This document shows, piece after piece, positions 20,001 to 64,000 of a DNA stretch of 64,000 bases. This DNA is from Macrostomum lignano (lineage: Eukaryota), in contig NIVC01000526.1 of the NCBI GenBank assembly GCA_002269645.1, positions 1 to 64,000 of the forward strand, given 5' to 3'. Within the stretch, counting starts at the first letter, position 1; each line of letters begins with the position of its first letter. The notes beneath the pieces were generated by a model. The model was not told the DNA's origin. It saw only the letters and a program-made list of their open reading frames with translations, and did not search any database. Made by a program: the position numbers and the translations under genes.

Positions 20001-22234
20001 TTATTCTCAATCCAGATTATGTCCGATCCGAGCTGAAAGCTGAAACTGAACTTAGAAATTATGGCTCACAAGCTCGAAATTATGGCTCACAAGCTCGAAT
20101 TATGGCTGACTCTCCCACTGTCCTCTGACTCCCCCACTGTCCTCTGACTCCCCCACTGTCCTCTGACTCCCCCACTGTCCTCTGACTCCCGCAATGTCCT
20201 TTGACTCCCCACTGTCCTTTGACCCCTCTCCCCACTGACCTCTGACTGATAAACTGCTCGAAATAAAGGCTCACAAGCTCGAATTATGGCTCACAAGCTC
20301 GAATTAAGGCTCACAAGCTCGAATTATGGCTCACAAGCTCGAATTATGGCTCACAAGCTCGAAATTAAGGCTCACAAGCTCGAACTTATGGCTCACAAGT
20401 TCGAATTATGGCTCACAAGCTCGAATTATGGCTCACAAGCTCGAAATTAAGGCTCACAAGCTCGAAATTTCACAAGCTCGAAATTAAGGCTCATAAGCTT
20501 GAATTATGGCTCACAAGCTCGAATTAAAGCTCACAAGCTCGAATTATGGCTCACAAGCTCGAATTTAAGTTCAAAAGCTCGAAATTTCACAAGCTCGAAA
20601 TTCTAAAAGTTCAAAATTTCATATCATCGAAAAGCCTTGATTAGCCACTTCCGTCAGCTAGCAGCGCGAACAATTTGAAAGTACACTCTGGGACTCTTCG
20701 CTAATGCAATTTTTCTATTTATTTTGCATAATATCCAATACACTAAAAATATCTTTCAAAAGCTATTGGTAGCATCTGACAAGAACGAATGACTTTCGGA
20801 AGCGCCAAGAAGCCCGGATTCCAGGCTCAGCTCAGCATGCTGAGAGAACCCATTCTTCTTCTTCTTTAAATTTGCCTGGAATTTCCCGATGAAGCGGGAG
20901 GGGAAGCTGGACGAAGCTTTTTCTTTTCCTCTATACTCCGCAATTTCTCCCTTTTCCGGCCGGAGTACCCCCGTGTCAAATCAGCAGTGAGGATTCTTCT
21001 TAGATCCAGCCGCGGAGGGACTTCTATACTGTAGCTGACCGGCCAGTGTCTTCATCAATCTAACGATTCTGCTTCCGCAAAAACTTTACCTTTGTTGTCT
21101 TGGTTAATTTGGTGTCTTGCACTTTCATGCCCCATAGTTGAGATTTTCTAAATTATCGTAGACGGCAGGAGCAACTATACCTGTGTGTTAAAAGCAACAT
21201 TCCTCGCCATCTAGTTAGTAAAACTTTAGACTGCATTTTGTCGTTGCTCACCCCATTGCCAACTGGTTGAAAGTTCAACATATCGAAGGTTGGCTTCTTC
21301 GACTTTGACACGGCAATGTGCACCTGGATGCTGGGCTTTGAGGGCGGCAGGCAAAGCAGCTGGTGCGGCTGCGCCCAAATCAGCAGCTTCCCGCCCAGCT
21401 CACCGCCGCTGGCGCACAGGACATTCTTCGGCAGGCTATTGTGCAGCACAGCGCTGTCAAATATCCAGCTCAGCTCGCAGTTGCAGTGCACCGGGTTGTC
21501 GGCCAGGTACACGTGGCCTTTGAATCTGTCCCGGTACAGCAGCGCTAGCATCGCCGGCTTCAGCTCGCTGCCCAGCCGGCGGATCTGATTGGAGCCGACA
21601 TCCAGCTGGGTGAGGCGCTTCAGGGCCAGCAGCGGCTCGGCCGGCAGCTCCTTGATGACGTTGTTGGCCAGCAGCAGCTCCTGTAGCGCCGGGAAGGCGG
21701 TCTCAACGCCCAGAGGGAATCGCTGCAGGCCGGCGTGGTTCAACTCGAGCGCCTGCGGCCGCCAGTTCGGCCGCAACCCGGCGAAGCTGAGTTCGCCAGG
21801 CCAGCCAACCGGATTGTAGCTGAGCAGCAGCCGTGACGCGCTGACGCCTTCAAGGAAGCCGAAGTCTGTCAGCTGGTTGTTGGACAAGTTCAGCTCCTCC
21901 AGAGAGCTCGTGTTGTTGAAGGCGCCAGCCGGCAGGCGCAGCGGTCCTGCGAGGCTGGCGCGGTTGTTGAAGCTCAACTTGTGAAGGCGGCCTGCGATAG
22001 GCGCGATCAGGTCCAGCAGGCCGGCGCCGTCCAGGCCGGTGCCGGTCAGACGCAGGTCGGACACGATCGTGTTGGCCAGCGGCCGGCCAGACTGGCGGGA
22101 GTAGTGAGGAGTCTGGGTCAACCACAGCGTCCGCAGGCTGGGACTGTCGCGGAACAGGCGCGGCGGCAGGGTGGCGAAGGGCAGATTTCCTGCAGGCGGT
22201 GGATGGGGCAACTTTTAGTAGTAGTAGTAGTAGC

Positions 22235-23505: not shown

Positions 23506-23546
23506 TATCTGAGTAGATTTGAATATCATAAGCATGCTGAGTCACT

Positions 23547-24062
23547 TGAGGGGCGATTTGGGGGGTGATTTGAGGGGTGATTTGAGGGGTGATTTAAGGG
23601 GTGATTTGAGGGGTGATTTGATGGGTGATTTGAGGGGCGATTTGAGGGGTGATTTGATGGGTGATTTGAGGGGCGATTTGAGGGGTGATTTGAGGGATGA
23701 TTCGAGGAGTGATTTAAGGGGTGATTTGAGGGGTGATTTGATGGGTGATTAGAGAGGTGATTTGAGGGGTGATTTGAGGGGTGATTTGATGGGTGATTTG
23801 AAGGGCGATTTGAGGGGTGATTAGAGAGGTGATTTGAGGGGTGATTTGAGGGGCGATTTGAGGGGTGATTTGAGGGGCGATTTGAGGGGCGATTTGAGGG
23901 ATGATTTGAGGGGTGATTTGAGGGGCGATTTGAAGGGCGATTTGAGGAGTGATTTGAGGGGTGATTTGAGGGATGATTTGAGGAGCGATTTTAGAGTTGA
24001 TTTGAGGGGTGATTTGACGGACGATTTGAAGGTTGATTTAAGGGTTTATTTAAGGGGCGATT
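23547..24062. repeat. 12-bp G-rich minisatellite (continues at 26138-26255 after an insertion)
   Basis: gatttgagggg(t/c) units in the same orientation on both sides of the 24063-26137 element. Confidence 0.95.
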
Positions 24063-26137
24063 GGGTCTACGACGTTTGCCAGCCGACGTTTGCCTGCGGG
24101 ACGTTTGCCAGCCGACGTTTGCCAGCCGACGTTTGCCTGCGGGACGTTTGCCAGCCGACGTTTGCCTGCGAGAGTTTTGCCAGCCGATGTTTGCCAGCCG
24201 ACGTTTGCCTGCGAGACTTTTGCCAGCCGACGTTTGCCAGCCGACGTTTGCCTGCGAGACTTTTGCCAGCCGACGTTTGCCAGCCGACGTTTGCCTGCGG
24301 GACGTTTGCCAGCCGACGTTTGCCAGCCGACGTTTGCCAGCCGAAATTTGCCTGCGAGAGTTTTGCCAGCCGATGTTTGCCAGCCGACGTTTGCCTGCGA
24401 GACTTTTGCCAGCCGACGTTTGCCAGCCGACGTTTGCCTGCGAGACTTTTGCCAGCCGACGTTTGCCAGCCGACGTTTGCCAGCCGACGTTTGCCTGCGA
24501 GACTTTTGCCAGCCGACGTTTGCCAGCCGACGTTTGCCTGCGAGACTTTTGCCAGCCGACGTTTGCCAACCGACGTTTGCCTGCCGGACATTTGCAGGCG
24601 GCAATTGGTTAAAGAATTATGCCCTCTCTAGGCTTACATGTACTTGCATTTGAAAACTGTGGACACAGCACAGGACACAGGAATCTAATTCCAGCTCGCT
24701 CCCTACTACTGCTATTAAATATACAGGTTACTAACAAACTACTGTTCAGGCTTATTGAAGTTATTGCTCTTTTCTGCCTAAATAGGAAGGTAAAAATACA
24801 AAATAGGAGTTTCCATCGTCACAGTTGATGTCCATGTATGCCATGGAATGGCCCTTTCCATCTCAGTGGCCAAACAAGCTAAGTATTTACAAGCTAAATG
24901 GGAAAATACTGAGAAATCCACAATGGTATTGGCCTATAGTCTCGCCTATATTACTTAACTCAAAAGCCAAACTCTGCTTAACGGAGTTTGGCCATGACAG
25001 CGTGCACTTGACAAGCTGCATTGGAATTAATTCGCTTACTTTTGGATCTCCCAATGAACTGGGAAATATATAAGCCAGAATTATCGTTCAGCAGGTCTTT
25101 TGTTTGCTCAAAACTTGGCTCGCTGGAGATTCCCGAATAAATTTGCGTGTCTTCATTCGCAAATCAGAAATCAAACATCTCAAACTGGGAAAAGCGATAC
25201 AAAACTGTCAGAAGTAAACTTTATAATATTTTCACATTCAAAGAAATTGTTGTTAAACTAGATGCTAGATTGATGAACTGCATAATTTGTATAGATTTTG
25301 TTTTCGAACTTTTATGCATGCGAATAACCGTCAAAAAGTTGGACTAAAAAAACTTTTTTTCAATCCGCTAAAGTGCGAATATTTCAGTATCAAATTTTTC
25401 ACTCACTGACTTAATGTTGGCTGGCAAACGTCGGCAGGCAAACGTCGGCTGGCAAACGTCGGCTGGCAAACGTCGGCCGGCAAACGTCCCGCAGGCAAAC
25501 GTCGGCTGGCAAACGTCGGCAGGCAAACGTCGGCTGGCAAACGTCGGCTGGCAAACGTCGGCTGGCAAACGTCCCGCAGGCAAACGTCGGCTGGCAAACG
25601 TCGGCTGGCAAACGTCCCGCAGGCAAAACGTCGGCTGGCAAACGTCCCGCAGGCAAAAGTCTCGCAGGCAAACGTCGGCTGGCAAACGTCCCGCAGGCAA
25701 AACGTCGGCTGGCAAACGTCCCGCAGGCAAAAGTCTCGCAGGCAAATGTCGGCTGGCAAACGTCTCGCAGGCAAACGTCGGCTGGAAAACGTCCCGCAGG
25801 CAAACGTCGGCTGGCAAACGTCGGCTGGCAAACGTCCCGCAGGCAAAACGTCGGCTGGCAAACGTCCCGCAGGCAAAACGTCGGCTGGCAAACGTCCCGC
25901 AGGCAAAAGTCTCGCAGGCAAACGTCGGCTGGCAAACGTCCCGCAGGCAAAACGTCGGCTGGCAAACGTCGGCTGGCAAACGTCCCGCAGGCAAAACGTC
26001 GGCTGGCAAACGTCGGCTGGCAAACGTCGGCTGGCAAACGTCGGCTGGCAAACGTCCCGCAGGCAAACGTCGGCTGGCAAACGTCCCGCAGGCAAACGTC
26101 GGCTGGCAAACGTCCCGCTGGCAAACGTCGCTATCCC
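24063..26137. mobile_element. Foldback/MULE-like non-autonomous element (2075 bp) with TIRs built from 14-bp tandem units and a 9-bp TSD
   Basis: Left arm (tttgccagccgacg)n at 24063-24590; right arm (cgtcggctggcaaa)n at about 25418-26137. Termini GGGtctaCGACG and CGTCGctatCCC. ggggcgatt is duplicated at 24054-24062 and 26138-26146. No internal transposase. Confidence 0.8.
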
Positions 26138-26984
26138 GGGGCGATTTAAGGGGCTATTTGAGGGGTGATTTGATGGGTGATTTGAGGGGTGATTAGAGAG
26201 GTGATTTGAGGGGTGATTTGAGGGGGTGATTTGAGGAGGATCTGGGGGGTGATTTCACTGAGATAATGTTTAATATTATTGCTTAGCATCAAGGTTCTAG
26301 AATCGGTAACGGAACCCGATGACTGCAGACCCGGCCGGACAGACAGTGTTACGTAGATTGTTCAACAGCGGCTGAGAAAAAACGGTTGCAAAGTTTTGAC
26401 GCTATAGCGTTCGGTGTTCCTCTAAGCATGCGCACAGTTCAGCCAGTGCTGCTGTCTCTGCCCCTGTCATTAATCAATATTTAGCATTTTTACAGCTCAG
26501 TGTTAACTATACACAGACTGGAACGCTGCAGGTTACCCACCCCCACCCCCTCTAGCGATCCGCTCTCTCTGACTCTGACCAACTCACAGGTCCGGGTGCC
26601 GACAAAGGCTTAGTTAGGGGAGGGGCAGCAAGGCGCTTCACCTCTCACGCGATCGGGCCCTTCAATGCGACTCACATTGGCATGATTGATAATTACCCTA
26701 CGACTGCTCTTTGCTGAAATGCACCGGGCCGCCAGCCTCCGGGATCCTCAGTTGCTTGAGCCTTAGTTTGAGGGTTTGCAGAGGGGAGGAGGCAAGCAAG
26801 TCATGCTAATATTAGGAGGATGGACAATCAGAAAGTTCTCTATCACTTTCCTGATCAGAGACAAAAAATGAACACTGTTAATCGTCCTCTCAACAAAGTT
26901 CCCACGCAAAGTGACGCGCACTTGACCCCTTCGCAGCGAGTCTGGCGAATGAGCAGAGTGAGGGAGCTGCTCGAACCTCAGCTC

Positions 26985-27480
26985 GCGGCAGGCAGTTGTC
27001 ATGGAGCAGTCGGATGGCCCTGGTGACCTTGTCACGCCTCTTGTCCTTGATTGCTTCCTTCAGCTGGCGCAATGTATTGTAGCAACGTAGGACTCTCCCG
27101 TGACCCGTCTGCTTCTCAGGCAACCACTCGATCAGCAGCACCCTTTGATGATTCCAGAAGATGGTAACCATCCGATTCTTCATTGACGGCACGATTGCAC
27201 GCTGAATCTCAGGATCGAGTTTTGGCACCCATCTGGCAAAAACCTTCGACATTCCCAGCTGGACCGTCAGGATGGACTGCGCGCTGCCATAACTGATGCC
27301 ACAGGCCTCTGCTTTCTCAGCAACAGTCACTCATTTGTCCTCGTCAAGGAGGTTCTATACGTTGTCGATGACACTCTGGCTGGTGGAGGTCCTGGGTCTG
27401 CCACTGCGAGGTTCGTCTTCGAAGTCACCTATTTGTGACACGACTTTGCTCATAATGGATGCACGAATGGCTTCGCTTGA
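26985..27480 (-). pseudogene. Degenerate mariner transposase (stop codons, internal deletion)
   Basis: FEDEPRSGRPRTS, GISYGSAQSIL, GMSKVFARWVPKL, MVTIFW, LRQLKEAIKDKRR, LLHDN. In-frame stops; the region carrying the first catalytic Asp appears to be missing. Confidence 0.88.
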
Positions 27481-27789: not shown

Positions 27790-30700
27790 AATAGAATTTG
27801 GACATTCAAGCCAGGTCACAGACTCGGGCTGCTTGGGAATGTACAACCATAGAATGTAGAATGGACATTCAAGCCAGGTCACAGACTCGGGCTGCTTGGG
27901 AATGTACAACCATAGAATGTAGAATGGACATTCAAGCCAGGTCACAGACTCGGGCTGCTTGGGAATGCACAACCATAGAATGTAGAATGGACATTCAAGC
28001 CAGGTCACAGACTCGGGCTGCTTGGGAATGCACAACCATAGAATGTAGAATGGACATTCAAGCCAGGTCACAGACTCGGGCTGCTTGGGAATGCACAACC
28101 ATAGAATGTAGAATGGACATTCAAGCCAGGTCACAGACTCGGGCTGCTTGGGAATGCACAACCATAGAATGTAGAATGGACATTCAAGCCAGGTCACAGA
28201 CTCGGGCTGCTTGGGAATGCACAACCATAGAATGTAGAATGGACATTCAAGCCAGGTCACAGACTCGGGCTGCTTGGGAATGCACAACCATAGAATGTAG
28301 AATGGACATTCAAGCCAGGTCACAGACTCGGGCTGCTTGGGAATGCACAACCATAGAATGTAGAATGGACATTCAAGCCAGGTCACAGACTCGGGCTGCT
28401 TGGGAATGCACAACCATAGAATGTAGAATGGACATTCAAGCCAGGTCACAGACTCGGGCTGCTTGGGAATGCACAACCATAGAATGTAGAATGGACATTC
28501 AAGCCAGGTCACAGACTCGGGCTGCTTGGGAATGCACAACCATAGAATGTAGAATGGACATTCAAGCCAGGTCACAGACTCGGGCTGCTTGGGAATGCAC
28601 AACCATAGAATGTAGAATGGACATTCAAGCCAGGTCACAGACTCGGGCTGCTTGGGAATGCACAACCATAGAATGTAGAATGGACATTCAAGCCAGGTCA
28701 CAGACTCGGGCTGCTTGGGAATGCACAACCATAGAATGTAGAATGGACATTCAAGCCAGGTCACAGACTCGGGCTGCTTGGGAATGCACAACCATAGAAT
28801 GTAGAATGGACATTCAAGCCAGGTCACAGACTCGGGCTGCTTGGGAATGCACAACCATAGAATGTAGAATGGACATTCAAGCCAGGTCACAGACTCGGGC
28901 TGCTTGGGAATGCACAACCATAGAATGTAGAATGGACATTCAAGCCAGGTCACAGACTCGGGCTGCTTGGGAATGCACAACCATAGAATGTAGAATGGAC
29001 ATTCAAGCCAGGTCACAGACTCGGGCTGCTTGGGAATGCACAACCATAGAATGTAGAATGGACATTCAAGCCAGGTCACAGACTCGGGCTGCTTGGGAAT
29101 GCACAACCATAGAATGTAGAATGGACATTCAAGCCAGGTCACAGACTCGGGCTGCTTGGGAATGCACAACCATAGAATGTAGAATGGACATTCAAGCCAG
29201 GTCACAGACTCGGGCTGCTTGGGAATGCACAACCATAGAATGTAGAATGGACATTCAAGCCAGGTCACAGACTCGGGCTGCTTGGGAATGCACAACCATA
29301 GAATGTAGAATGGACATTCAAGCCAGGTCACAGACTCGGGCTGCTTGGGAATGCACAACCATAGAATGTAGAATGGACATTCAAGCCAGGTCACAGACTC
29401 GGGCTGCTTGGGAATGCACAACCATAGAATGTAGAATGGACATTCAAGCCAGGTCACAGACTCGGGCTGCTTGGGAATGCACAACCATAGAATGTAGAAT
29501 GGACATTCAAGCCAGGTCACAGACTCGGGCTGCTTGGGAATGCACAACCATAGAATGTAGAATGGACATTCAAGCCAGGTCACAGACTCGGGCTGCTTGG
29601 GAATGCACAACCATAGAATGTAGAATGGACATTCAAGCCAGGTCACAGACTCGGGCTGCTTGGGAATGCACAACCATAGAATGTAGAATGGACATTCAAG
29701 CCAGGTCACAGACTCGGGCTGCTTGGGAATGCACAACCATAGAATGTAGAATGGACATTCAAGCCAGGTCACAGACTCGGGCTGCTTGGGAATGCACAAC
29801 CATAGAATGTAGAATGGACATTCAAGCCAGGTCACAGACTCGGGCTGCTTGGGAATGCACAACCATAGAATGTAGAATGGACATTCAAGCCAGGTCACAG
29901 ACTCGGGCTGCTTGGGAATGCACAACCATAGAATGTAGAATGGACATTCAAGCCAGGTCACAGACTCGGGCTGCTTGGGAATGCACAACCATAGAATGTA
30001 GAATGGACATTCAAGCCAGGTCACAGACTCGGGCTGCTTGGGAATGCACAACCATAGAATGTAGAATGGACATTCAAGCCAGGTCACAGACTCGGGCTGC
30101 TTGGGAATGCACAACCATAGAATGTAGAATGGACATTCAAGCCAGGTCACAGACTCGGGCTGCTTGGGAATGCACAACCATAGAATGTAGAATGGACATT
30201 CAAGCCAGGTCACAGACTCGGGCTGCTTGGGAATGCACAACCATAGAATGTAGAATGGACATTCAAGCCAGGTCACAGACTCGGGCTGCTTGGGAATGCA
30301 CAACCATAGAATGTAGAATGGACATTCAAGCCAGGTCACAGACTCGGGCTGCTTGGGAATGCACAACCATAGAATGTAGAATGGACATTCAAGCCAGGTC
30401 ACAGACTCGGGCTGCTTGGGAATGCACAACCATAGAATGTAGAATGGACATTCAAGCCAGGTCACAGACTCGGGCTGCTTGGGAATGCACAACCATAGAA
30501 TGTAGAATGGACATTCAAGCCAGGTCACAGACTCGGGCTGCTTGGGAATGCACAACCATAGAATGTAGAATGGACATTCAAGCCAGGTCACAGACTCGGG
30601 CTGCTTGGGAATGCACAACCATAGAATGTAGAATGGACATTCAAGCCAGGTCACAGACTCGGGCTGCTTGGGAATGCACAACCATAGAATGTAGAATGGA

Positions 30701-33700
30701 CATTCAAGCCAGGTCACAGACTCGGGCTGCTTGGGAATGCACAACCATAGAATGTAGAATGGACATTCAAGCCAGGTCACAGACTCGGGCTGCTTGGGAA
30801 TGCACAACCATAGAATGTAGAATGGACATTCAAGCCAGGTCACAGACTCGGGCTGCTTGGGAATGCACAACCATAGAATGTAGAATGGACATTCAAGCCA
30901 GGTCACAGACTCGGGCTGCTTGGGAATGCACAACCATAGAATGTAGAATGGACATTCAAGCCAGGTCACAGACTCGGGCTGCTTGGGAATGCACAACCAT
31001 AGAATGTAGAATGGACATTCAAGCCAGGTCACAGACTCGGGCTGCTTGGGAATGCACAACCATAGAATGTAGAATGGACATTCAAGCCAGGTCACAGACT
31101 CGGGCTGCTTGGGAATGCACAACCATAGAATGTAGAATGGACATTCAAGCCAGGTCACAGACTCGGGCTGCTTGGGAATGCACAACCATAGAATGTAGAA
31201 TGGACATTCAAGCCAGGTCACAGACTCGGGCTGCTTGGGAATGCACAACCATAGAATGTAGAATGGACATTCAAGCCAGGTCACAGACTCGGGCTGCTTG
31301 GGAATGCACAACCATAGAATGTAGAATGGACATTCAAGCCAGGTCACAGACTCGGGCTGCTTGGGAATGCACAACCATAGAATGTAGAATGGACATTCAA
31401 GCCAGGTCACAGACTCGGGCTGCTTGGGAATGCACAACCATAGAATGTAGAATGGACATTCAAGCCAGGTCACAGACTCGGGCTGCTTGGGAATGCACAA
31501 CCATAGAATGTAGAATGGACATTCAAGCCAGGTCACAGACTCGGGCTGCTTGGGAATGCACAACCATAGAATGTAGAATGGACATTCAAGCCAGGTCACA
31601 GACTCGGGCTGCTTGGGAATGCACAACCATAGAATGTAGAATGGACATTCAAGCCAGGTCACAGACTCGGGCTGCTTGGGAATGCACAACCATAGAATGT
31701 AGAATGGACATTCAAGCCAGGTCACAGACTCGGGCTGCTTGGGAATGCACAACCATAGAATGTAGAATGGACATTCAAGCCAGGTCACAGACTCGGGCTG
31801 CTTGGGAATGCACAACCATAGAATGTAGAATGGACATTCAAGCCAGGTCACAGACTCGGGCTGCTTGGGAATGCACAACCATAGAATGTAGAATGGACAT
31901 TCAAGCCAGGTCACAGACTCGGGCTGCTTGGGAATGCACAACCATAGAATGTAGAATGGACATTCAAGCCAGGTCACAGACTCGGGCTGCTTGGGAATGC
32001 ACAACCATAGAATGTAGAATGGACATTCAAGCCAGGTCACAGACTCGGGCTGCTTGGGAATGCACAACCATAGAATGTAGAATGGACATTCAAGCCAGGT
32101 CACAGACTCGGGCTGCTTGGGAATGCACAACCATAGAATGTAGAATGGACATTCAAGCCAGGTCACAGACTCGGGCTGCTTGGGAATGCACAACCATAGA
32201 ATGTAGAATGGACATTCAAGCCAGGTCACAGACTCGGGCTGCTTGGGAATGCACAACCATAGAATGTAGAATGGACATTCAAGCCAGGTCACAGACTCGG
32301 GCTGCTTGGGAATGCACAACCATAGAATGTAGAATGGACATTCAAGCCAGGTCACAGACTCGGGCTGCTTGGGAATGCACAACCATAGAATGTAGAATGG
32401 ACATTCAAGCCAGGTCACAGACTCGGGCTGCTTGGGAATGCACAACCATAGAATGTAGAATGGACATTCAAGCCAGGTCACAGACTCGGGCTGCTTGGGA
32501 ATGCACAACCATAGAATGTAGAATGGACATTCAAGCCAGGTCACAGACTCGGGCTGCTTGGGAATGCACAACCATAGAATGTAGAATGGACATTCAAGCC
32601 AGGTCACAGACTCGGGCTGCTTGGGAATGCACAACCATAGAATGTAGAATGGACATTCAAGCCAGGTCACAGACTCGGGCTGCTTGGGAATGCACAACCA
32701 TAGAATGTAGAATGGACATTCAAGCCAGGTCACAGACTCGGGCTGCTTGGGAATGCACAACCATAGAATGTAGAATGGACATTCAAGCCAGGTCACAGAC
32801 TCGGGCTGCTTGGGAATGCACAACCATAGAATGTAGAATGGACATTCAAGCCAGGTCACAGACTCGGGCTGCTTGGGAATGCACAACCATAGAATGTAGA
32901 ATGGACATTCAAGCCAGGTCACAGACTCGGGCTGCTTGGGAATGCACAACCATAGAATGTAGAATGGACATTCAAGCCAGGTCACAGACTCGGGCTGCTT
33001 GGGAATGCACAACCATAGAATGTAGAATGGACATTCAAGCCAGGTCACAGACTCGGGCTGCTTGGGAATGCACAACCATAGAATGTAGAATGGACATTCA
33101 AGCCAGGTCACAGACTCGGGCTGCTTGGGAATGCACAACCATAGAATGTAGAATGGACATTCAAGCCAGGTCACAGACTCGGGCTGCTTGGGAATGCACA
33201 ACCATAGAATGTAGAATGGACATTCAAGCCAGGTCACAGACTCGGGCTGCTTGGGAATGCACAACCATAGAATGTAGAATGGACATTCAAGCCAGGTCAC
33301 AGACTCGGGCTGCTTGGGAATGCACAACCATAGAATGTAGAATGGACATTCAAGCCAGGTCACAGACTCGGGCTGCTTGGGAATGCACAACCATAGAATG
33401 TAGAATGGACATTCAAGCCAGGTCACAGACTCGGGCTGCTTGGGAATGCACAACCATAGAATGTAGAATGGACATTCAAGCCAGGTCACAGACTCGGGCT
33501 GCTTGGGAATGCACAACCATAGAATGTAGAATGGACATTCAAGCCAGGTCACAGACTCGGGCTGCTTGGGAATGCACAACCATAGAATGTAGAATGGACA
33601 TTCAAGCCAGGTCACAGACTCGGGCTGCTTGGGAATGCACAACCATAGAATGTAGAATGGACATTCAAGCCAGGTCACAGACTCGGGCTGCTTGGGAATG

Positions 33701-36700
33701 CACAACCATAGAATGTAGAATGGACATTCAAGCCAGGTCACAGACTCGGGCTGCTTGGGAATGCACAACCATAGAATGTAGAATGGACATTCAAGCCAGG
33801 TCACAGACTCGGGCTGCTTGGGAATGCACAACCATAGAATGTAGAATGGACATTCAAGCCAGGTCACAGACTCGGGCTGCTTGGGAATGCACAACCATAG
33901 AATGTAGAATGGACATTCAAGCCAGGTCACAGACTCGGGCTGCTTGGGAATGCACAACCATAGAATGTAGAATGGACATTCAAGCCAGGTCACAGACTCG
34001 GGCTGCTTGGGAATGCACAACCATAGAATGTAGAATGGACATTCAAGCCAGGTCACAGACTCGGGCTGCTTGGGAATGCACAACCATAGAATGTAGAATG
34101 GACATTCAAGCCAGGTCACAGACTCGGGCTGCTTGGGAATGCACAACCATAGAATGTAGAATGGACATTCAAGCCAGGTCACAGACTCGGGCTGCTTGGG
34201 AATGCACAACCATAGAATGTAGAATGGACATTCAAGCCAGGTCACAGACTCGGGCTGCTTGGGAATGCACAACCATAGAATGTAGAATGGACATTCAAGC
34301 CAGGTCACAGACTCGGGCTGCTTGGGAATGCACAACCATAGAATGTAGAATGGACATTCAAGCCAGGTCACAGACTCGGGCTGCTTGGGAATGCACAACC
34401 ATAGAATGTAGAATGGACATTCAAGCCAGGTCACAGACTCGGGCTGCTTGGGAATGCACAACCATAGAATGTAGAATGGACATTCAAGCCAGGTCACAGA
34501 CTCGGGCTGCTTGGGAATGCACAACCATAGAATGTAGAATGGACATTCAAGCCAGGTCACAGACTCGGGCTGCTTGGGAATGCACAACCATAGAATGTAG
34601 AATGGACATTCAAGCCAGGTCACAGACTCGGGCTGCTTGGGAATGCACAACCATAGAATGTAGAATGGACATTCAAGCCAGGTCACAGACTCGGGCTGCT
34701 TGGGAATGCACAACCATAGAATGTAGAATGGACATTCAAGCCAGGTCACAGACTCGGGCTGCTTGGGAATGCACAACCATAGAATGTAGAATGGACATTC
34801 AAGCCAGGTCACAGACTCGGGCTGCTTGGGAATGCACAACCATAGAATGTAGAATGGACATTCAAGCCAGGTCACAGACTCGGGCTGCTTGGGAATGCAC
34901 AACCATAGAATGTAGAATGGACATTCAAGCCAGGTCACAGACTCGGGCTGCTTGGGAATGCACAACCATAGAATGTAGAATGGACATTCAAGCCAGGTCA
35001 CAGACTCGGGCTGCTTGGGAATGCACAACCATAGAATGTAGAATGGACATTCAAGCCAGGTCACAGACTCGGGCTGCTTGGGAATGCACAACCATAGAAT
35101 GTAGAATGGACATTCAAGCCAGGTCACAGACTCGGGCTGCTTGGGAATGCACAACCATAGAATGTAGAATGGACATTCAAGCCAGGTCACAGACTCGGGC
35201 TGCTTGGGAATGCACAACCATAGAATGTAGAATGGACATTCAAGCCAGGTCACAGACTCGGGCTGCTTGGGAATGCACAACCATAGAATGTAGAATGGAC
35301 ATTCAAGCCAGGTCACAGACTCGGGCTGCTTGGGAATGCACAACCATAGAATGTAGAATGGACATTCAAGCCAGGTCACAGACTCGGGCTGCTTGGGAAT
35401 GCACAACCATAGAATGTAGAATGGACATTCAAGCCAGGTCACAGACTCGGGCTGCTTGGGAATGCACAACCATAGAATGTAGAATGGACATTCAAGCCAG
35501 GTCACAGACTCGGGCTGCTTGGGAATGCACAACCATAGAATGTAGAATGGACATTCAAGCCAGGTCACAGACTCGGGCTGCTTGGGAATGCACAACCATA
35601 GAATGTAGAATGGACATTCAAGCCAGGTCACAGACTCGGGCTGCTTGGGAATGCACAACCATAGAATGTAGAATGGACATTCAAGCCAGGTCACAGACTC
35701 GGGCTGCTTGGGAATGCACAACCATAGAATGTAGAATGGACATTCAAGCCAGGTCACAGACTCGGGCTGCTTGGGAATGCACAACCATAGAATGTAGAAT
35801 GGACATTCAAGCCAGGTCACAGACTCGGGCTGCTTGGGAATGCACAACCATAGAATGTAGAATGGACATTCAAGCCAGGTCACAGACTCGGGCTGCTTGG
35901 GAATGCACAACCATAGAATGTAGAATGGACATTCAAGCCAGGTCACAGACTCGGGCTGCTTGGGAATGCACAACCATAGAATGTAGAATGGACATTCAAG
36001 CCAGGTCACAGACTCGGGCTGCTTGGGAATGCACAACCATAGAATGTAGAATGGACATTCAAGCCAGGTCACAGACTCGGGCTGCTTGGGAATGCACAAC
36101 CATAGAATGTAGAATGGACATTCAAGCCAGGTCACAGACTCGGGCTGCTTGGGAATGCACAACCATAGAATGTAGAATGGACATTCAAGCCAGGTCACAG
36201 ACTCGGGCTGCTTGGGAATGCACAACCATAGAATGTAGAATGGACATTCAAGCCAGGTCACAGACTCGGGCTGCTTGGGAATGCACAACCATAGAATGTA
36301 GAATGGACATTCAAGCCAGGTCACAGACTCGGGCTGCTTGGGAATGCACAACCATAGAATGTAGAATGGACATTCAAGCCAGGTCACAGACTCGGGCTGC
36401 TTGGGAATGCACAACCATAGAATGTAGAATGGACATTCAAGCCAGGTCACAGACTCGGGCTGCTTGGGAATGCACAACCATAGAATGTAGAATGGACATT
36501 CAAGCCAGGTCACAGACTCGGGCTGCTTGGGAATGCACAACCATAGAATGTAGAATGGACATTCAAGCCAGGTCACAGACTCGGGCTGCTTGGGAATGCA
36601 CAACCATAGAATGTAGAATGGACATTCAAGCCAGGTCACAGACTCGGGCTGCTTGGGAATGCACAACCATAGAATGTAGAATGGACATTCAAGCCAGGTC

Positions 36701-37133
36701 ACAGACTCGGGCTGCTTGGGAATGCACAACCATAGAATGTAGAATGGACATTCAAGCCAGGTCACAGACTCGGGCTGCTTGGGAATGCACAACCATAGAA
36801 TGTAGAATGGACATTCAAGCCAGGTCACAGACTCGGGCTGCTTGGGAATGCACAACCATAGAATGTAGAATGGACATTCAAGCCAGGTCACAGACTCGGG
36901 CTGCTTGGGAATGCACAACCATAGAATGTAGAATGGACATTCAAGCCAGGTCACAGACTCGGGCTGCTTGGGAATGCACAACCATAGAATGTAGAATGGA
37001 CATTCAAGCCAGGTCACAGACTCGGGCTGCTTGGGAATGCACAACCATAGAATGTAGAATGGACATTCAAGCCAGGTCACAGACTCGGGCTGCTTGGGAA
37101 TGCACAACCATAGAATGTAGAATGGACATTCAA
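27790..37133. repeat. 63-bp satellite, 148 near-identical copies (9.3 kb)
   Basis: Unit tggacattcaagccaggtcacagactcgggctgcttgggaatgcacaaccatagaatgtagaa. First unit at 27799, last start at 37123; (37123-27799)/63 = 148. I saw variation (c>t) only in the first two units. Confidence 0.99.
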
Positions 37134-43779: not shown

Positions 43780-46700
43780 CAAAATTCCCCAAAACTCACA
43801 ATATTCAAACTTCACATTCCTAAACCTCACATTCCTTAAACCTCCCATTCCCCAAATCTCATATTCCCAAATCTCACATTCCCAAATCTCATATTCCCAA
43901 ATCTCACATTTCCAAATCTCACATTGCCGAATTTCACATTCCAAAATCTAAATCCATCAAATCTCACATTCCTAAATCCCAGATTCCCAAATCTAAAATT
44001 CCCCGAATCTCAAATTCCCAAATCTCAAATTCCCAAATCTCAAATTCCCAAATCTCAAATTCCCAAATCTCAAATTCCCAAATCTCACATTGCCGAATTT
44101 CACAGTCCAAAATCTAACCTCCACCCCAAATCTCACATTTCCAAATCTCAAATTCCCAAATCTCAAATTCCCCAAATCTCAATTTCCCCAAATCTCAATT
44201 CCCCAAATATCAAATTACCAAATCTCAAATTCTCAAATCTCAAATTCCCAAATCTCACATTGCCGAATTTCACATTCCAAAATCTCACATTCCCAAATCT
44301 CAAATTGCCGAATTTCACAGTCGAAAATCTAAAATCCCCCAAATCTCACATTCCCAAATCTCAAATTCCCAAATCTCAAATTCCCGAATCTCAAATTCCC
44401 AAATCTCAAATTCCTAAATCTCACATTCCCCATATCTGACATCATTAAATCTGATGATATTCCCAAATTACATATTCCTGAATCCCACTCTCGGTAATGA
44501 AAATATAGTTTTTATGGAAAATCAAGTTTTCGACCATTCAAGTTCTTGTAACGATAAAAGTCATACACTACTTTAGTTACTAATGGTGAGTAGTGTGCTA
44601 TGAATTCGATAAGATGCCAAGGGAGCAGAAAAGAGAACTATAAGTACGAGAAGCATGCTAAGCACGCACATCTTGCAATTTTTTCTCCGCTGAAGACCAC
44701 TTTCTGCTGCTGGAATGTGAGATTTGGGAATGAGTTTTGGGAATGTGAGATTTAGGAATGTGAGATTTGGGAATGTGAGATTTAGGAATGTGAGATTTGG
44801 GAATGTGAGATTTGGGAATGTGAGATTTGGGAATGTGAGATTTGAGGAATTGGAGATTTGGGAATGCGAGATTTGTGAATTTGAGATTTGGGAATGTGAG
44901 ATTTGGGAATGTGAGATTTGGAAATGTGTGTTTGGGAATGTGAGATTTGGGAATGTGAGATTTGGGAATGTGAGATTTGGGAATGTGAGGTTTGGGAATT
45001 CAAGATTTGGGAATGGGAAATTTGTGAATTTGAGATTTGGGAATGTGAGATTTAGGAATGTGAGATTTGGGAATGTGAGATTTGAGGAATTGGAGATTTG
45101 GGAATGCGAGATTTGTGAATTTGAGATTTGGGAATGTGAGATTTGGGAATTAGTTTTGGGAATGTGAGATTTAGGAATGTGAGATTTGGGAATGTGAGAT
45201 TTAGGAATGTGAGATTTGGGAATGTGAGATTTGGGGATGTGAGATTTGGGAATGTGAGATTTGGGGATGTGAGATTTGGGAATGTGAGGTTTGGGAATGT
45301 GAGATTTGGGAATGTGAGATTTAAGGGGAATGTGAGATTTGGGAATGTGAGATTTGGAAATGTATGATTTGGGAATGTGAGATTTGGGAATGTGAGATTT
45401 GGGAATTCAAGATTTGGAGAATGTGAGATTTGGGAATTCAAGATTTGAGAATGTGAGGTTTGGGAATTCAAGATTTGGAGAATGTGAGATTTGGGAATGT
45501 GAGATTTGTGAATTTGAGATTTGGGAATGTGAGATTTAGGAATGTGAGATTTGGGAATGTGAGATTTGAGGAATTGGAGATTTGGGAATGCGAGATTTGT
45601 GAATTTGAGATTTGGGAATGTGAGATTTGGGAATGTGAGATTTGGAAATGTGTGTTTGGGAATGTGAGATTTGGGAATGTGAGATTTGGGAATGTGAGAT
45701 TTGGGAATGTGAGGTTTGGGAATTCAAGATTTAGGAATGTGAGATTTAGGAATGTGAGATTTAAGAATGTGAGATTTGGGAATGTGAGATTTGGGAATGT
45801 GAGATTTGGGGATGTGAGGTTTGGGAATTCAAGATTTGGAGAATGTGAGATTTGGGAATGTGAGGTTTGGGAATTGAAGATTTGGGAATGGGAAATTTGT
45901 GAATTTGAGATTTGGGAATGTGAGATTTAGGAATGTGAGATTTGGGAATGTGAGATTTGAGGAATTGGAGATTTGGGAATGCGAGATTTGTGAATTTGAG
46001 ATTTGGGAATGTGAGATTTGGGAATGTGAGATTTGGAAATGTGAGATTTGGGAATGTGAGATTTGGGAATGTGAGATTTGGGAATGTGAGATTTGGGAAT
46101 GTGAGGTTTGGGAATTCAAGATTTGGGAATGTGAGATTTAGGAATGTGAGATTTAAGAATGTGAGATTTGGGAATGTGAGATTTGGGAATGTGAGATTTG
46201 GGGATGTGAGGTTTGGGAATTCAAGATTTGGAGAATGTGAGATTTGGGAATGTGAGGTTTGGGAATTCAAGATTTGGAGAATGTGAGATTTGGGAATGTG
46301 AGATTTGGGAATGTGATATTTAAGGGGAATGTGAGATTTGGGAATGTGAGATTTGGAAATGTATGATTTGGGAATGTGAGATTTGGGAATGTGAGATTTA
46401 AGGGGAATGTGAGATTTGGGAATGTGAGATTTGGAAATGTATGATTTGGGAATGTGAGATTTGGGAATGTGAGATTTGGAAATGTATGATTTGGGAATGT
46501 GAGATTTGGGAATGTGAGATTTGGGAATGTGAGATTTAGGAATGTGAGATTTGGGGAATTTAAGATTTGGGAATGCGAGATTTGTGAATTTGAGATTTGG
46601 GAATGTGAGATTTGGGGATGTGAGATTTGGGGATGTGAGATTTGGGAATGTGAGACTTGGGAATGTGAGATTTGGGAATGTGAGATTTGGGAGATTTTAG

Positions 46701-46860
46701 ATTTTTGAAAGTGAAATTCGGCAATGTGAGATTTCGAAATATGAGATTTGGTAATTTAAGATTTGGGAATGCGAGATTTGTAAATTTGAGATTTGTGACT
46801 GTGAGAGTTTGGGAATGTGAGGTTTTGAGGAATGTTAGTTTTGGGGATTCTGAGGATTTT
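43780..46860. repeat. Two inverted 15-bp arrays (foldback-like arrangement)
   Basis: (attcccaaatctcac)n at about 43780-44440 and (gtgagatttgggaat)n at about 44715-46860, separated by about 280 bp of unique DNA. Confidence 0.85.
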
Positions 46861-51037: not shown

Positions 51038-59482
<8,445 letters not shown>

Positions 59483-61982: not shown

Positions 61983-63089
61983 TGGCCTGAGGAGGCTGAT
62001 ACATTTGTTTGTTTGATTTATCGGAGCATACAAGCATGACATTTTTATTGAATTTCGATAAGACGTCTGCCTCAATCTGTCATGCTGGCTGTCAAAGTTA
62101 ACAGAAAACCGGCAGGTACACTGCGCAATACTCGCCAACTCTGACTGAGTTTAGTGTAAATAATTGGGATGGATTGAATTCATCTGATCAGGTCGTGTTG
62201 CTGCATCAATGATGTAGCATGAGCAGGATCCGGTAAAGTCTGGTGAATGGCAAATGTAAGTTGCAAGTTAGAATTGGAACAAGCATCTGTTAGACTCAGC
62301 AAGATACTCGTATTTCCGAAATCATCAAAGATTAAAGTCGCCGCAAATACGAGTACATTTATTACGAGCTCGCACAAAAAACTTGGGATTATCTAACAAG
62401 TTTGAGCACACGATCTTTTAAGTCTTTAAGAAACACCTCTAGAAATCTTGCTTAGCCATGTTCATGGGCTACACTCGGGGAAACATGGCTTATGTCGAAG
62501 AACTAGCAGAATCACCCATGAATACCGTAGGAAAGTGTCTGCCCAAGATTTTCAAAAAGATGGCTCCTACGAGTTCTATATCCTGCAGTCCATCGAACCC
62601 TTCCTTATTGTGACCGAAATCCAATAATCTTTATCTACCGAGACCGTGACTGAGTCAATGTCAATGTCTTTGATCTGGTATGTGGAGGACTGGAAGTCCA
62701 ATTGAAACGGACAGATGCCGGTCATATAAGTTACACCCAGCATAAAGAACATAAGACGGATTATCCGGTGTCGAATTACCTGAATAAATGTAATTTAGCT
62801 CGTATCTTCTTTGCAGCTAACGCAAACTGGTTAAAACTATATCGATTCCATTCAGGTCAATAAGTTCTGCATTGCCGGCAGCAGAATTTCGCATTGGTTG
62901 GGAGCACTCCTATACCCGAACTGGCAAGTTGTGGAGGAGACTGCTCAAGGTGTTCGGAGATTGGTTAAGGACCTATACCAGCTGCTTAAAATAAGCTAGC
63001 AGAAACTAAGAAAGCAAACCCAAGATACGGAACGACACCAGCTGTTTAATTTATTGTTGTTGATTTCAACCAAGCAAGGCCCAACAGCT

Positions 63090-64000
63090 ATGGCGCAACC
63101 AGGCATGTAAGTCGTACAATGTGGATTTTACAAATCACATCTTGCTGGCGATTTACTCGGGTAGTTTTATTTAAAAAGACTTGCAACAAATTGCAATTGC
63201 AATTGATCGTTTTGAAAGCTGAAAATTATGTAAGGCGAATTTTGCTAGTAAAAATACGAGCTGTCAAAGAACCGAAAAGCTGCTTGTACGAGAGCCAGTT
63301 CAGTTGGAAAGTACACCTAACTGTACGAATAAGATTAGCCAATTCGCTATGAGTCGATAGAGGCATACCTTGTCATGCAATGACTGCAAGGAACAGCCAT
63401 CAATAAGTTGCTTAGATCAGTATCAGCCGAAGTAAAAGCAACTAAGCCTATAAGTTATCAATTGCAAACTTCGAGCAGAAATCTGCATTTCAGACTATTT
63501 AAACGAAAAAACAAAATCTACCTCGTGCTACAGGCTAATCAGTGTCAGCTTTGCCATCCTGGTTTTGATGCTAGTGACAAATGGCACTCACGGACTATTC
63601 AATGAGGACAAGAGAGGCTACTACTGGCCTCGCATGTGGAAATTCAGGAACGCTGACAAGAGAGGCTACTACTGGCCTGGCATGTGGAACTTCAGGAACG
63701 CTGACAAGAGAGGCTACTACTGGCCTGGCATGTGGAAATTCAGGAACGCTGACAAGAGAGGCTACTACTGGCCTGGCATGTGGAACTTCAGGAACGCTGA
63801 CAAGAGAGGCTACTACTGGCCTGGCATGTGGAACTTCAGGAACGCTGACAAGAGAGGCTACTACTGGCCTGGCATGTGGAACTTCAGGAACGCTGACAAG
63901 AGAGGCTACTACTGGCCTGGCATGTGGAACTTCAGGAATGCTGACAAGAGAGGCTACTACTGGCCTGGCATGTGGAACTTCAGGAACGCTGACAAGAGAG
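63090..64000 (+). CDS. Multi-copy neuropeptide/secreted peptide precursor (runs off the window). Exons 63090-63106 and 63534->64000
   Basis: ATGGCGCAACCAGGCAT|gtaagt...gctacag|GCTAATC gives MAQPGMLISVSFAILVLMLVTNGTHG-LFNED-KR, then 8 complete 48-bp units (GYYWP[G/R]MW[N/K]FRNAD-KR) in one uninterrupted frame. Confidence 0.85.

What the first reader, a model, noticed from the sequence alone, without database searches (positions are those of the whole stretch)
63090..64000. Unannotated multi-copy prohormone: spliced signal peptide plus at least 8 KR-flanked GYYWPGMWNFRNAD peptides
The ORF track omits this gene because it has a 17-nt first coding exon and runs off the window. Seen in sequence: exon 63090-63106 (ATG GCG CAA CCA GGC AT|gtaagt) joins in phase to the acceptor gctacag|63534. 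This gives a classic signal peptide, MAQPGMLISVSFAILVLMLVTNGTHG, with a likely cleavage at THG|LF, followed by a short acidic piece LFNED. Lys-Arg codons then recur every 48 nt (63610, 63658, 63706, 63754, 63802, 63850, 63898, 63946, 63994). The 8 complete peptides are 1x GYYWPRMWKFRNAD, 1x GYYWPGMWKFRNAD and 6x GYYWPGMWNFRNAD. There are no indels, unlike most non-coding minisatellites in this window. Established knowledge: signal peptide plus tandem copies between dibasic convertase sites is the architecture of FMRFamide-type neuropeptide precursors and yeast alpha-factor. Inference: I do not recognise this Trp/Tyr-rich 14-mer as a known family. It has no Gly before KR, so it should not be amidated. 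The internal Arg might allow trimming to GYYWPGMWNF. It could be a new neuropeptide, a pheromone or seminal peptide, or an aromatic antimicrobial peptide.
Basis: partly seen in the sequence, partly recalled or inferred. Interest (0 to 1): 0.92.

Follow-up and report, generated by a model that had tools for sequence, protein, structure and literature searches.

The report
Unnamed flatworm multi-copy WPGMW peptide precursor
The end of the window holds the start of a real, spliced gene for a secreted precursor that carries at least eight tandem copies of a Trp/Tyr-rich peptide between Lys-Arg cleavage sites; it belongs to a small, unnamed family seen so far only in the flatworm Macrostomum and one related transcriptome, and is most likely a new signalling peptide of an ordinary kind.

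Summary
A 17-nt first coding exon (63090-63106) joins in phase to 63534. This gives a signal peptide, LFNED, and eight 48-nt KR-GYYWPGMWNFRNAD units that run off the window.

The open frame and the absence of indels are weak evidence on their own, because other non-coding minisatellites here have both. The support comes from relatives:
- A UniRef product (P0001, 97% identical) is spliced at exactly this junction.
- A Macrostomum lignano paralog (P0002, three loci) has the same 17-nt exon and phase-2 intron, and three YWPGMW units.
- An intron-free RNA-seq contig from a divergent genome (L004) has four units.

In all 15 units a dibasic site lies exactly three residues before an invariant WPGMW, and an Arg or Arg-Arg follows 3-6 residues later. 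Spacers diverge in length and sequence. No unit has a Gly amidation signal. The P1 Arg is kept through four different codons. The three homeologous P0002 copies differ only at synonymous sites.

Exhaustive HMMER, Pfam, PDB and literature searches found no named family.

Verdict: a real prohormone-type precursor and a new member of a known kind. Tissue, receptor, total copy number and stop codon remain unknown. Interest is moderate.

The parts
62723..62730 (+). TATA-like element CATATAAG (possible core promoter; inference only)
   Evidence: Sequence read. It lies about 30-40 nt upstream of the 5' end of the region covered by P0001. No functional test was done. The resemblance to the paralog's promoter is not above shuffled controls.
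62768..62949 (+). 5' untranslated exon (minimum extent)
   Evidence: P0001 residues 4-62 map here, with a 6-nt indel, a frame-shifting indel and substitutions. This is the pattern expected of non-coding leader diverging between alleles or homeologs. In the window the leader has an in-frame TAA at 62818 and only a 1-codon uORF at 62788.
62950..63002 (+). Leader intron, 53 nt, GT...AG
   Evidence: Absent from P0001. The boundaries are CAAG|GTGTTC and GCTAGCAG|AAACTA.
63003..63089 (+). 5' untranslated part of the second exon
   Evidence: Covered by P0001 residues 63-91. There is no in-frame ATG before 63090.
63090..63106 (+). First coding segment, 17 nt (MAQPG + 2 nt of Met6); start codon in context ACAGCTATGG
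   Evidence: The paralog P0002 has a first coding exon of the same 17 nt.
63107..63533 (+). Phase-2 intron, 427 nt, GTAAGT...CTACAG
   Evidence: It is removed in P0001. The intron position and phase are shared with the P0002 gene (introns of 559 and 405 nt).
63534..63594 (+). Rest of the signal peptide (residues 6-26, ...LISVSFAILVLMLVTNGTHG)
   Evidence: Hydrophobic core ISVSFAILVLML has a Kyte-Doolittle mean of 2.81. Thr at -3 and Gly at -1 fit the (-3,-1) rule. The cleavage site is inferred, not predicted with SignalP.
63595..63609 (+). Short pro-piece LFNED ending in an acidic residue before the first KR
   Evidence: The same layout occurs in P0002 (LPASASLME-RR) and L004 (SPTGWAVE-RR).
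63610..64000 (+). Coding tandem array: eight complete 48-nt units KR-GYYWP[G/R]MW[N/K]FRNAD plus the start of a ninth; continues beyond the window
   Evidence: The unit is closest at the DNA level to unit 2 of the paralog (35-36 of 42 nt). The stop codon and total copy number are not in the window.

Best explanation
This is the 5' part of a real protein-coding gene, almost certainly from Macrostomum lignano or a very close relative. It encodes a secreted, prohormone-type multi-copy peptide precursor.

Shown here:
- The gene has a leader exon and a 53-nt leader intron.
- A 17-nt first coding segment is followed by a 427-nt phase-2 intron.
- The next exon completes a signal peptide and then encodes LFNED and at least eight tandem KR-GYYWPGMWNFRNAD units.
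- It belongs to a small family, called here the WPGMW peptides. In this family a dibasic site always lies three residues before an invariant WPGMW core.

Inferred mechanism:
- The signal peptide is removed on entry into the ER, probably after THG.
- A prohormone convertase cleaves after each KR. A neural PC2 homolog is known in M. lignano.
- A carboxypeptidase removes the basic residues. This releases many identical, non-amidated, aromatic peptides: the 14-mer GYYWPGMWNFRNAD, or the 10-mer GYYWPGMWNF if the conserved Arg is also used.
- These most likely act as signalling peptides (neuropeptide or hormone) on a receptor that is still unknown.

The window gene looks like a recent minisatellite-style amplification of one unit, resembling unit 2 of the older, heterogeneous paralog P0002. 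That fits a genome which makes tandem arrays very readily.

My rough probabilities: real secreted, dibasic-processed multi-copy precursor about 0.85; its products are internal signalling peptides about 0.55-0.6.
For: - Anatomy.
- Splicing: P0001 (UniRef, 97% identical) maps as 62768-62949 | 63003-63106 | 63534 onward.
- Paralog: P0002 is M. lignano BOX15_Mlig013514g1/Mlig027226g1, present at three loci. It has the same 17-nt first coding exon and phase-2 intron.
- Second genome: phmmer of P0002 against 1.84 billion representatives finds only P0003 besides P0001 and itself. Its 926-nt Logan contig L004 is intron-free. It encodes a complete precursor with a signal peptide, four units and the same Cys-loop tail as P0002.
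- Conservation pattern typical of peptide precursors: 15 of 15 units are [KR]R|xx[YF]WPGMWx[FYH] followed by R or RR after 3-6 residues. Spacers of 3-22 residues diverge and are often acidic.
- Selection at the protein level: the P1 Arg is encoded by AGA, CGA, CGC and CGG, and the core Pro by CCT, CCG and CCC. The three homeologous P0002 genes differ at four CDS sites, all synonymous. Divergence is 0.6% in the CDS against 4.5% plus 162 gapped columns in the intron.
- Start codon: ATG 63090 is the first usable start.
- Processing enzyme: a PC2 homolog with neural expression and an RNAi phenotype is reported in M. lignano (PMC4490696).
- No folded domain: P0002 has mean pLDDT 47.5.
Against: - There is no direct expression, localisation or peptidomic evidence for this gene. 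The paralog IDs were not found in the supplements of three M. lignano expression papers.
- P0001 is a database gene product of untraceable origin, so the window gene's junction rests on that model plus comparative structure, not on reads I could inspect.
- The array's units are 98% identical at the DNA level, so the window array itself says nothing about selection. Its four variant positions across the eight units comprise three non-synonymous changes and one synonymous, and unit 1 breaks the otherwise invariant core (WPRMW).
- The 3' end, stop codon and copy number are outside the window.
- AF2 gave the repeat region a beta-stack with best-model pLDDT 76.
- P0002 has Gly/Tyr-rich stretches that could suggest a structural protein.
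- The family was found in only two genomes, so constraint is sampled thinly.
Confidence: 0.6

Rival explanations
1. Same precursor and same dibasic processing, but the peptides are released to the outside or into a mating partner. They would be a water-borne pheromone, or a seminal-fluid or gland 'allohormone' in this reciprocally mating hermaphrodite, rather than an internal neuropeptide.
For: - Recent, rapid amplification to at least eight near-identical copies, with the array content differing from the allele or homeolog P0001. That is the kind of fast turnover often seen in reproduction-related secreted products.
- The family is restricted to two genomes.
- The peptides are non-amidated.
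- M. lignano has many uncharacterised, prostate-limited secreted transcripts (PMC5977470, listed but not read in detail).
Against: - There are no tissue data either way.
- The older paralog is conserved between divergent genomes with strictly synonymous differences among homeologs. This fits a housekeeping signalling role at least as well.
- Dibasic processing with acidic spacers and a C-terminal Cys-loop peptide is the classic layout of the neuroendocrine regulated-secretion pathway.
Confidence: 0.2
2. It is an uncleaved secreted structural repeat protein, for example eggshell, adhesive or rhabdite material rich in Tyr and Trp for cross-linking. The KR pairs would be incidental.
For: - AF2 stacks the repeats into a beta-rich solenoid-like model with best pLDDT 76 and pTM 0.66.
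- P0002 has Gly/Tyr-rich stretches (GGGYGERYYDYYGG, NNYYYYYD). From my own knowledge, these recall Tyr-rich flatworm eggshell precursors.
Against: - The five AF2 models range from 42 to 76 pLDDT.
- Foldseek finds only weak generic beta-solenoids (E of 0.08 or worse, TM below 0.4).
- The irregularly spaced paralog has no confident fold (pLDDT 47.5).
- Conservation is confined to a 10-residue core plus the dibasic sites. Those sites are kept through codon turnover, while spacer length varies from 3 to 22 residues. That is incompatible with a regular structural repeat.
Confidence: 0.08
3. It is a precursor of Trp-rich antimicrobial or defence peptides of the indolicidin or tritrpticin type.
For: The peptides have a high aromatic content (0.36-0.50) and a W-P motif. 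Multi-copy dibasic-flanked precursors are also used for some invertebrate defence peptides (my own knowledge).
Against: - The predicted products are near neutral or acidic. Net charge at pH 7 is -0.24 for GYYWPGMWNFRNAD and GYYWPGMWNF, and -1.2 for the P0002 units ending in D.
- Trp-rich AMPs are strongly cationic (my own knowledge).
- There was no Pfam match.
Confidence: 0.04
4. The array is just another non-coding minisatellite, or a decaying pseudogene copy, that happens to keep a frame open downstream of a short exon.
For: - The window is packed with minisatellites. Several have open frames and no indels.
- Three of the six frames through this array are open.
- Unit 1 carries a core-breaking G>R change, and most variant positions in the array are non-synonymous.
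- The 3' end is unseen.
Against: - The array is in frame with an intact start codon, signal peptide and pro-piece. Both introns have canonical sites.
- A second copy of the gene (P0001) keeps the same frame and structure, while its leader has diverged by indels.
- The unit is homologous, including its KR, to units of a paralog under demonstrable purifying selection.
Confidence: 0.03

Closest known systems
Clade-specific multi-copy peptide (MCP) precursors of invertebrates, e.g. the non-amidated LWDY and AWDF peptides of acoelomorphs (PMC6188537) and the non-amidated W[I/L] peptides of Platynereis (PMC3890597)
   Same: Signal peptide, several paracopies of a short aromatic peptide between dibasic sites, conserved cores with divergent spacers, restricted taxonomic range, and no amidation signal.
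   Different: The motif xx[YF]WPGMWx[FYH] does not occur in the main text of those papers (their supplementary sequence files were not searched). Conservation sits at the N-terminal side of the unit, directly after the cleavage site, rather than at the C-terminus. The window gene's copies are near-identical at the DNA level, i.e. a very recent array.
FMRFamide-type and planarian prohormones processed by PC2 (Collins et al. 2010, PMC2953531; M. lignano PC2 homolog, PMC4490696)
   Same: The general architecture and the presumed processing route: signal peptidase, prohormone convertase at KR or RR, then carboxypeptidase.
   Different: There is no Gly-basic amidation signal. No sequence relation was found: WPG, GMW, YYW and YWP strings are absent from the text and supplements of the planarian catalogue. 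Neural expression is not shown.
Wamide / myoinhibitory peptide (allatostatin-B) family
   Same: Two Trp residues in a short multi-copy peptide.
   Different: The spacing is W-x3-W, not W-x6-7-W. The second Trp is not C-terminal, and there is no Gly for amidation.
Fungal alpha-factor-type pheromone precursors
   Same: A signal peptide followed by tandem KR-separated copies of a Trp-containing, non-amidated peptide.
   Different: This is an animal gene with spliceosomal introns. There is no long glycosylated pro-region and there are no X-Ala/X-Pro (Ste13) dipeptides after KR. No homology was detectable. The comparison of features draws on my own knowledge of alpha-factor.
Pedal peptide / orcokinin-type precursors (my own knowledge; not searched specifically)
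   Same: Many copies of a 12-20-residue non-amidated peptide between KR sites in spiralians and arthropods.
   Different: No shared motif, and no hit in the HMMER or Pfam searches.

Membership tests
Multi-copy secretory peptide (prohormone / MCP) precursor | N-terminal signal peptide | tested here: met
   A hydrophobic core with Kyte-Doolittle mean 2.6-3.1 is present in all three precursors. The window gene has T at -3 and G at -1. SignalP was not available, so the cleavage site is inferred.
Multi-copy secretory peptide (prohormone / MCP) precursor | Several paracopies each bounded by dibasic convertase sites | tested here: met
   Eight units in the window gene, three in P0002 and four in L004, all preceded by KR or RR.
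Multi-copy secretory peptide (prohormone / MCP) precursor | Peptide cores and cleavage sites conserved between paralogs and orthologs while spacers diverge | tested here: met
   WPGMW is kept in 14 of 15 units. The P1 Arg is kept in 15 of 15 through four codons. Spacers vary from 3 to 22 residues. The homeologs show only synonymous changes.
Multi-copy secretory peptide (prohormone / MCP) precursor | Processing enzymes present in the organism | tested here: met
   Literature only: the M. lignano PC2 homolog RNA815_2403.2 has neural expression and a lethal RNAi phenotype (PMC4490696).
Multi-copy secretory peptide (prohormone / MCP) precursor | Mature peptides detectable; expression in neurons or endocrine cells | not testable with these tools
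   No peptidomic or in situ data could be reached. The paralog IDs are absent from the three supplements searched.
Wamide / MIP (allatostatin-B) | W-x6-7-W with the C-terminal Trp followed by Gly and a basic site (amidated) | tested here: not met
   The spacing is W-P-G-M-W (x3). The Trp is followed by x[FYH], and no unit has Gly before a basic site. The family definition is as quoted in PMC3890597.
Trp-rich cationic antimicrobial peptides | Strong net positive charge | tested here: not met
   Net charge at pH 7 is -0.24 for the main 14-mer and 10-mer. The range across family units is -1.2 to +1.8.
Any curated protein family (Pfam-A) or solved structure | Significant profile match | tested here: not met
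   There is no Pfam hit above the gathering score. The single row (PF09292, 23.9 bits against a cut-off of 25, 0 significant stretches) is repeat noise. The best PDB E-value is 0.31.
Structured beta-solenoid repeat proteins | Regular repeat length and a reproducible, confident fold across family members | tested here: not met
   The window array gives pLDDT 76 in one of five models (range 42-76) with no significant Foldseek match. P0002 gives pLDDT 47.5. Unit spacing in the paralogs is irregular.

The most novel reading that the evidence does not exclude
The WPGMW peptides are a Macrostomum-lineage signalling invention whose dose evolves through minisatellite-style copy-number change. On this reading, an old, constrained three- or four-copy precursor (P0002 type) spawned a daughter gene in which one unit has been amplified to eight or more near-identical copies, and the array differs between alleles or homeologs. 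The amplified product might serve as an externally acting or partner-directed peptide (pheromone or seminal 'allohormone') in this hermaphrodite with known sexual conflict. That would link the genome's extreme propensity for tandem repeats directly to the evolution of a behavioural or reproductive signal.
Probability: 0.15. Interest if true: 0.7.

Novelty: new member of a known kind. Interest (0 to 1): 0.45.

Why it matters
Macrostomum lignano is a transgenic, transparent flatworm model used for regeneration, ageing and sexual-selection research. Its peptide signalling repertoire is barely charted, and the large flatworm neuropeptide surveys I could check did not cover it.

A cleanly defined, unnamed peptide family gives an immediately testable candidate ligand. 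It has a conserved 10-residue core, a heterogeneous conserved paralog and a recently amplified multi-copy daughter gene. It can be followed up by in situ hybridisation, RNAi, peptidomics and receptor deorphanisation.

It is also a tidy example of a coding minisatellite in a genome full of non-coding ones. That makes it useful as a warning for annotation pipelines, which miss the gene because of its 17-nt first coding exon. It is also useful for studying how peptide copy number evolves.

It does not change any general principle. Lineage-specific multi-copy peptide precursors are found routinely when under-sampled phyla are mined.

Tried and rejected
1. Extending the gene past the window end. 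P0001 could not be traced to a contig. An exact-match look-up of the neighbouring GRDP-like ORF found nothing. No database protein carries the 3' end of the window-type gene. The stop codon and copy number therefore remain unknown.
2. Identifying the organism through a neighbouring gene. The GRDP-like ORF has only about 40-53% identical relatives, the named ones from molluscs, a coral and a krill. This is uninformative beyond 'metazoan'. The attribution to Macrostomum rests on P0001 and P0002.
3. Expression data. Mlig013514 and Mlig027226 are absent from the supplements of PMC5816591, PMC5946080 and PMC12896417. No M. lignano cell atlas with neuropeptide data was found. The run SRR30276804 is not mentioned in any held paper, so the species of L004 is unknown.
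4. Literature string searches for GYYWP, WPGMW, YWPGM and others. The only hit was one irrelevant human paper. The planarian catalogue and its supplements, and the main texts of the Platynereis, nemertean/brachiopod and xenacoelomorph papers, lack the motif. McVeigh 2009 and Koziol 2016 are not held. According to PMC11196405, Koziol 2016 covered 12 parasitic species and not Macrostomum.
5. An apparent promoter resemblance between the window gene and the paralog. The local alignment score was 21 against 19 +/- 2.2 for shuffles, so I rejected it.
6. A structural-repeat reading from AF2. I rejected it as a perfect-repeat artefact.
7. Rfam scan of the window: no RNA family.
8. Further copies of the unit elsewhere in the window or in the paralog loci: none.

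Full report
**1. What is in the sequence**

TRF reports a single array at 63607-64000 with a 48-nt period, 8.2 copies, 98% matches and no indels. I joined 63090-63106 (ATGGCGCAACCAGGCAT, followed by GTAAGT) to 63534 (preceded by CTACAG). This gives MAQPGMLISVSFAILVLMLVTNGTHGLFNEDKR, followed by eight complete 16-codon units and the start of a ninth.

Unit 1 is GYYWPRMWKFRNAD, unit 3 is GYYWPGMWKFRNAD and the other six are GYYWPGMWNFRNAD. Unit 7 has one synonymous change.

**2. Why the window alone does not prove a gene**

The window is eukaryotic and extraordinarily rich in minisatellites, with about 30 arrays. Many of them also have 0% indels. Five of 18 other arrays have two or more completely open frames, and the 63-nt x 148 array yields ORFs of more than 3000 codons. 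Three of the six frames through the 48-nt array are open. The case has to rest on the signal peptide, the splice and relatives elsewhere.

**3. Relatives**

A search of 5.8 billion proteins with the spliced product found two hits.

- **P0001** (194 aa; sources UniRef and MetaClust, name withheld) is 97% identical. It contains ...TAMAQPGMLISVSF..., which is the exact exon-exon junction. Mapped onto the window it covers 62768-62949, 63003-63106 and 63534 onward, so it also lacks a 53-nt GT...AG intron in the leader. Its leader differs from the window by a 6-nt indel, a frame-shifting indel and substitutions, and its first four units are all the N-form. It is therefore an allele or homeolog rather than this exact locus. 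I could not trace it to a contig.
- **P0002** is Macrostomum lignano hypothetical protein BOX15_Mlig013514g1/Mlig027226g1 (PAA81773.1, PAA82422.1, PAA89280.1). It is encoded at three loci of assembly GCA_002269645.1. It has a signal peptide, then RR|ASYWPGMWQFDR..., KR|GYYWPGMWNFDR..., KR|AYYWPGMWRYQQRR..., and a Cys-containing tail. Its gene has a 17-nt first coding exon (ATGACAACTCTTGGAAA|GTAAGC) and a phase-2 intron of 559 or 405 nt. These match the window gene in exon length, intron position and phase.

An exhaustive phmmer search of P0002 against 1.84 billion representatives found only itself, P0001 and one more protein, **P0003** (E 7.5e-23).

P0003 comes from a 926-nt Logan contig of run SRR30276804 (L004). 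Read from its true ATG, the contig encodes a complete 166-aa precursor with no intron. The precursor has a signal peptide, RR|ASYWPGMWHFNR..., KR|GYFWPGMWHFSR..., KR|GYFWPGMWQYRR..., KR|ATFWPGMWRHR..., and RR|SSYMYERYWLGKACGETGDLYACSVLNGIFDY. It is most simply a transcript from a second, divergent genome. Its species is unknown to me.

A profile of P0002 plus L004 found nothing further.

**4. Evidence for selection on the peptide**

Across all 15 units in the three genes, the dibasic site lies exactly three residues before WPGMW. The core is invariant except for unit 1 of the window. An aromatic residue or His follows two residues later, and an Arg or Arg-Arg follows 3-6 residues after the core. 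After that come spacers of 3-22 residues that differ in length and sequence and are often acidic. No unit has Gly before a basic site.

At the codon level the invariant P1 Arg is written as AGA, CGA, CGC or CGG. The core Pro is written as CCT, CCG or CCC, and the core Gly as GGC or GGA. The cleavage site and the core are therefore maintained as amino acids, not as a DNA repeat.

The three homeologous P0002 genes differ at four CDS sites, all synonymous third positions. CDS divergence is 0.6%, against 4.5% plus 162 gapped columns in the intron and about 3% upstream.

This is the signature of a processed peptide precursor. In the window gene, however, that Arg also lies at P6 of the next KR site, where a basic residue favours convertase cleavage (my own knowledge). 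Both readings stay open.

**5. Gene model details**

In the spliced leader the nearest in-frame stop is TAA at 62818. There is no in-frame ATG before 63090, and the only upstream ATG (62788) opens a one-codon uORF. The start context is ACAGCTATGG.

A TATA-like CATATAAG lies at 62723-62730, about 30-40 nt upstream of the region covered by P0001. This is inference only. All three precursors have a strong N-terminal hydrophobic core.

The window unit is closest at the DNA level to unit 2 of P0002 (35-36 of 42 nt). The window gene therefore looks like a recent tandem amplification of one unit of an older heterogeneous gene.

**6. Rivals tested**

- **Structural repeat protein.** AF2 stacks the perfect repeats into a beta-rich model (best pLDDT 76). 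However, the five models range from 42 to 76. Foldseek finds only weak, generic beta-solenoids (E of 0.08 or worse, TM below 0.4). This is a documented AF2 artefact for perfect repeats (PMC11795689). The irregular paralog has no confident fold (pLDDT 47.5).
- **Antimicrobial peptide.** The products are near neutral.
- **Chance minisatellite or pseudogene.** This is contradicted by sections 3-5.
- **Exocrine, pheromonal or seminal peptide versus neuropeptide.** This cannot be decided, because I found no expression data.

**7. Comparison with known families**

No Pfam family reaches threshold and no PDB sequence matches. The motif strings are absent from the searchable literature. They are also absent from the planarian prohormone catalogue and its supplements, and from the main texts of the Platynereis, nemertean/brachiopod/phoronid and xenacoelomorph surveys. 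The big parasitic-flatworm survey did not include Macrostomum.

The architecture is that of clade-specific multi-copy peptide precursors, a well-known category that includes non-amidated aromatic peptides (PMC6188537, PMC3890597). It is not a Wamide/MIP, because the Trp spacing is wrong and there is no amidation. M. lignano has a neural PC2 homolog that could process it (PMC4490696).

**8. Verdict**

It is a new, unnamed, lineage-restricted peptide family in a standard prohormone architecture, so a new member of a known kind. The amplification as a coding minisatellite is a neat feature. Tissue, receptor, function, copy number and the 3' end are unknown. Interest is moderate (0.45), not the 0.92 first assigned.

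Noticed in passing
window 27799-37133: A 63-nt minisatellite of 148 copies, 99% identical with no indels. It spans 9.3 kb and has open frames of more than 3000 codons on both strands. It is almost certainly non-coding and is a useful negative control for 'open frame' arguments.
   Followed up: partly
window 23546-26255: A mirror-image arrangement of arrays. 24070-24595 (GACGTTTGCCAGCC-type) and 25419-26130 (GGCTGGCAAACGTC, its reverse complement) are flanked outside by 23546-24062 (TTGAGGGGTGAT) and 26138-26255 (GGGGTGATTTGA). Together they form a large palindromic minisatellite structure centred near 25000.
   Followed up: no
window 43812-46845: A second inverted pair of arrays: 43812-44442 (TCACATTCCCAAATC) and 44712-46845 (GGAATGTGAGATTTG, its reverse complement).
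   Followed up: no
window 26890-27330 (-): An ORF fragment matching the mariner/Tc1-type transposase DDE domain (PF01359, E 2.4e-8). It lies next to the palindromic arrays.
   Followed up: no
window 552-917 (+), 11951-12376 (-), 17048-22211 (-), 51038-51883 (+): Neighbouring gene fragments: a tubulin-tyrosine-ligase-family exon, a NUCB1-like exon, Ig and LRR exons, and a GRDP-like (PF07173) ORF. The closest relatives of the GRDP-like ORF are only about 40-53% identical, and the named ones come from molluscs, a coral and a krill.
   Followed up: partly
L001 20360-21042 (-) and L003 15985-17863 (-): At two of the three loci, the M. lignano paralog P0002 has a peptidase M13 (neprilysin-family, peptide-degrading) gene 5-10 kb downstream on the opposite strand. 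This may be coincidence.
   Followed up: no
L001 10018-10576 vs L003 10018-10422: The phase-2 intron of the P0002 gene itself contains a minisatellite (GTTGCTATGCGGTTTCCATGCA-like). Its copy number differs between homeologs, giving introns of 559 and 405 nt, while the CDS differs only at synonymous sites.
   Followed up: partly
P0002 residues 119-160; L004 ORF residues 135-166: A second conserved product follows the last dibasic site. It is a Tyr-rich peptide with a C-x8-C loop (YWLGKACGETGDxxACSxLNG) that is nearly identical between the two genomes. Whether the window gene ends in such a tail is unknown.
   Followed up: partly
L004 1-7: The Logan contig begins with CCGATCT, which looks like the end of an Illumina adapter (my own knowledge). 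The contig probably reaches the 5' end of a cDNA fragment.
   Followed up: no
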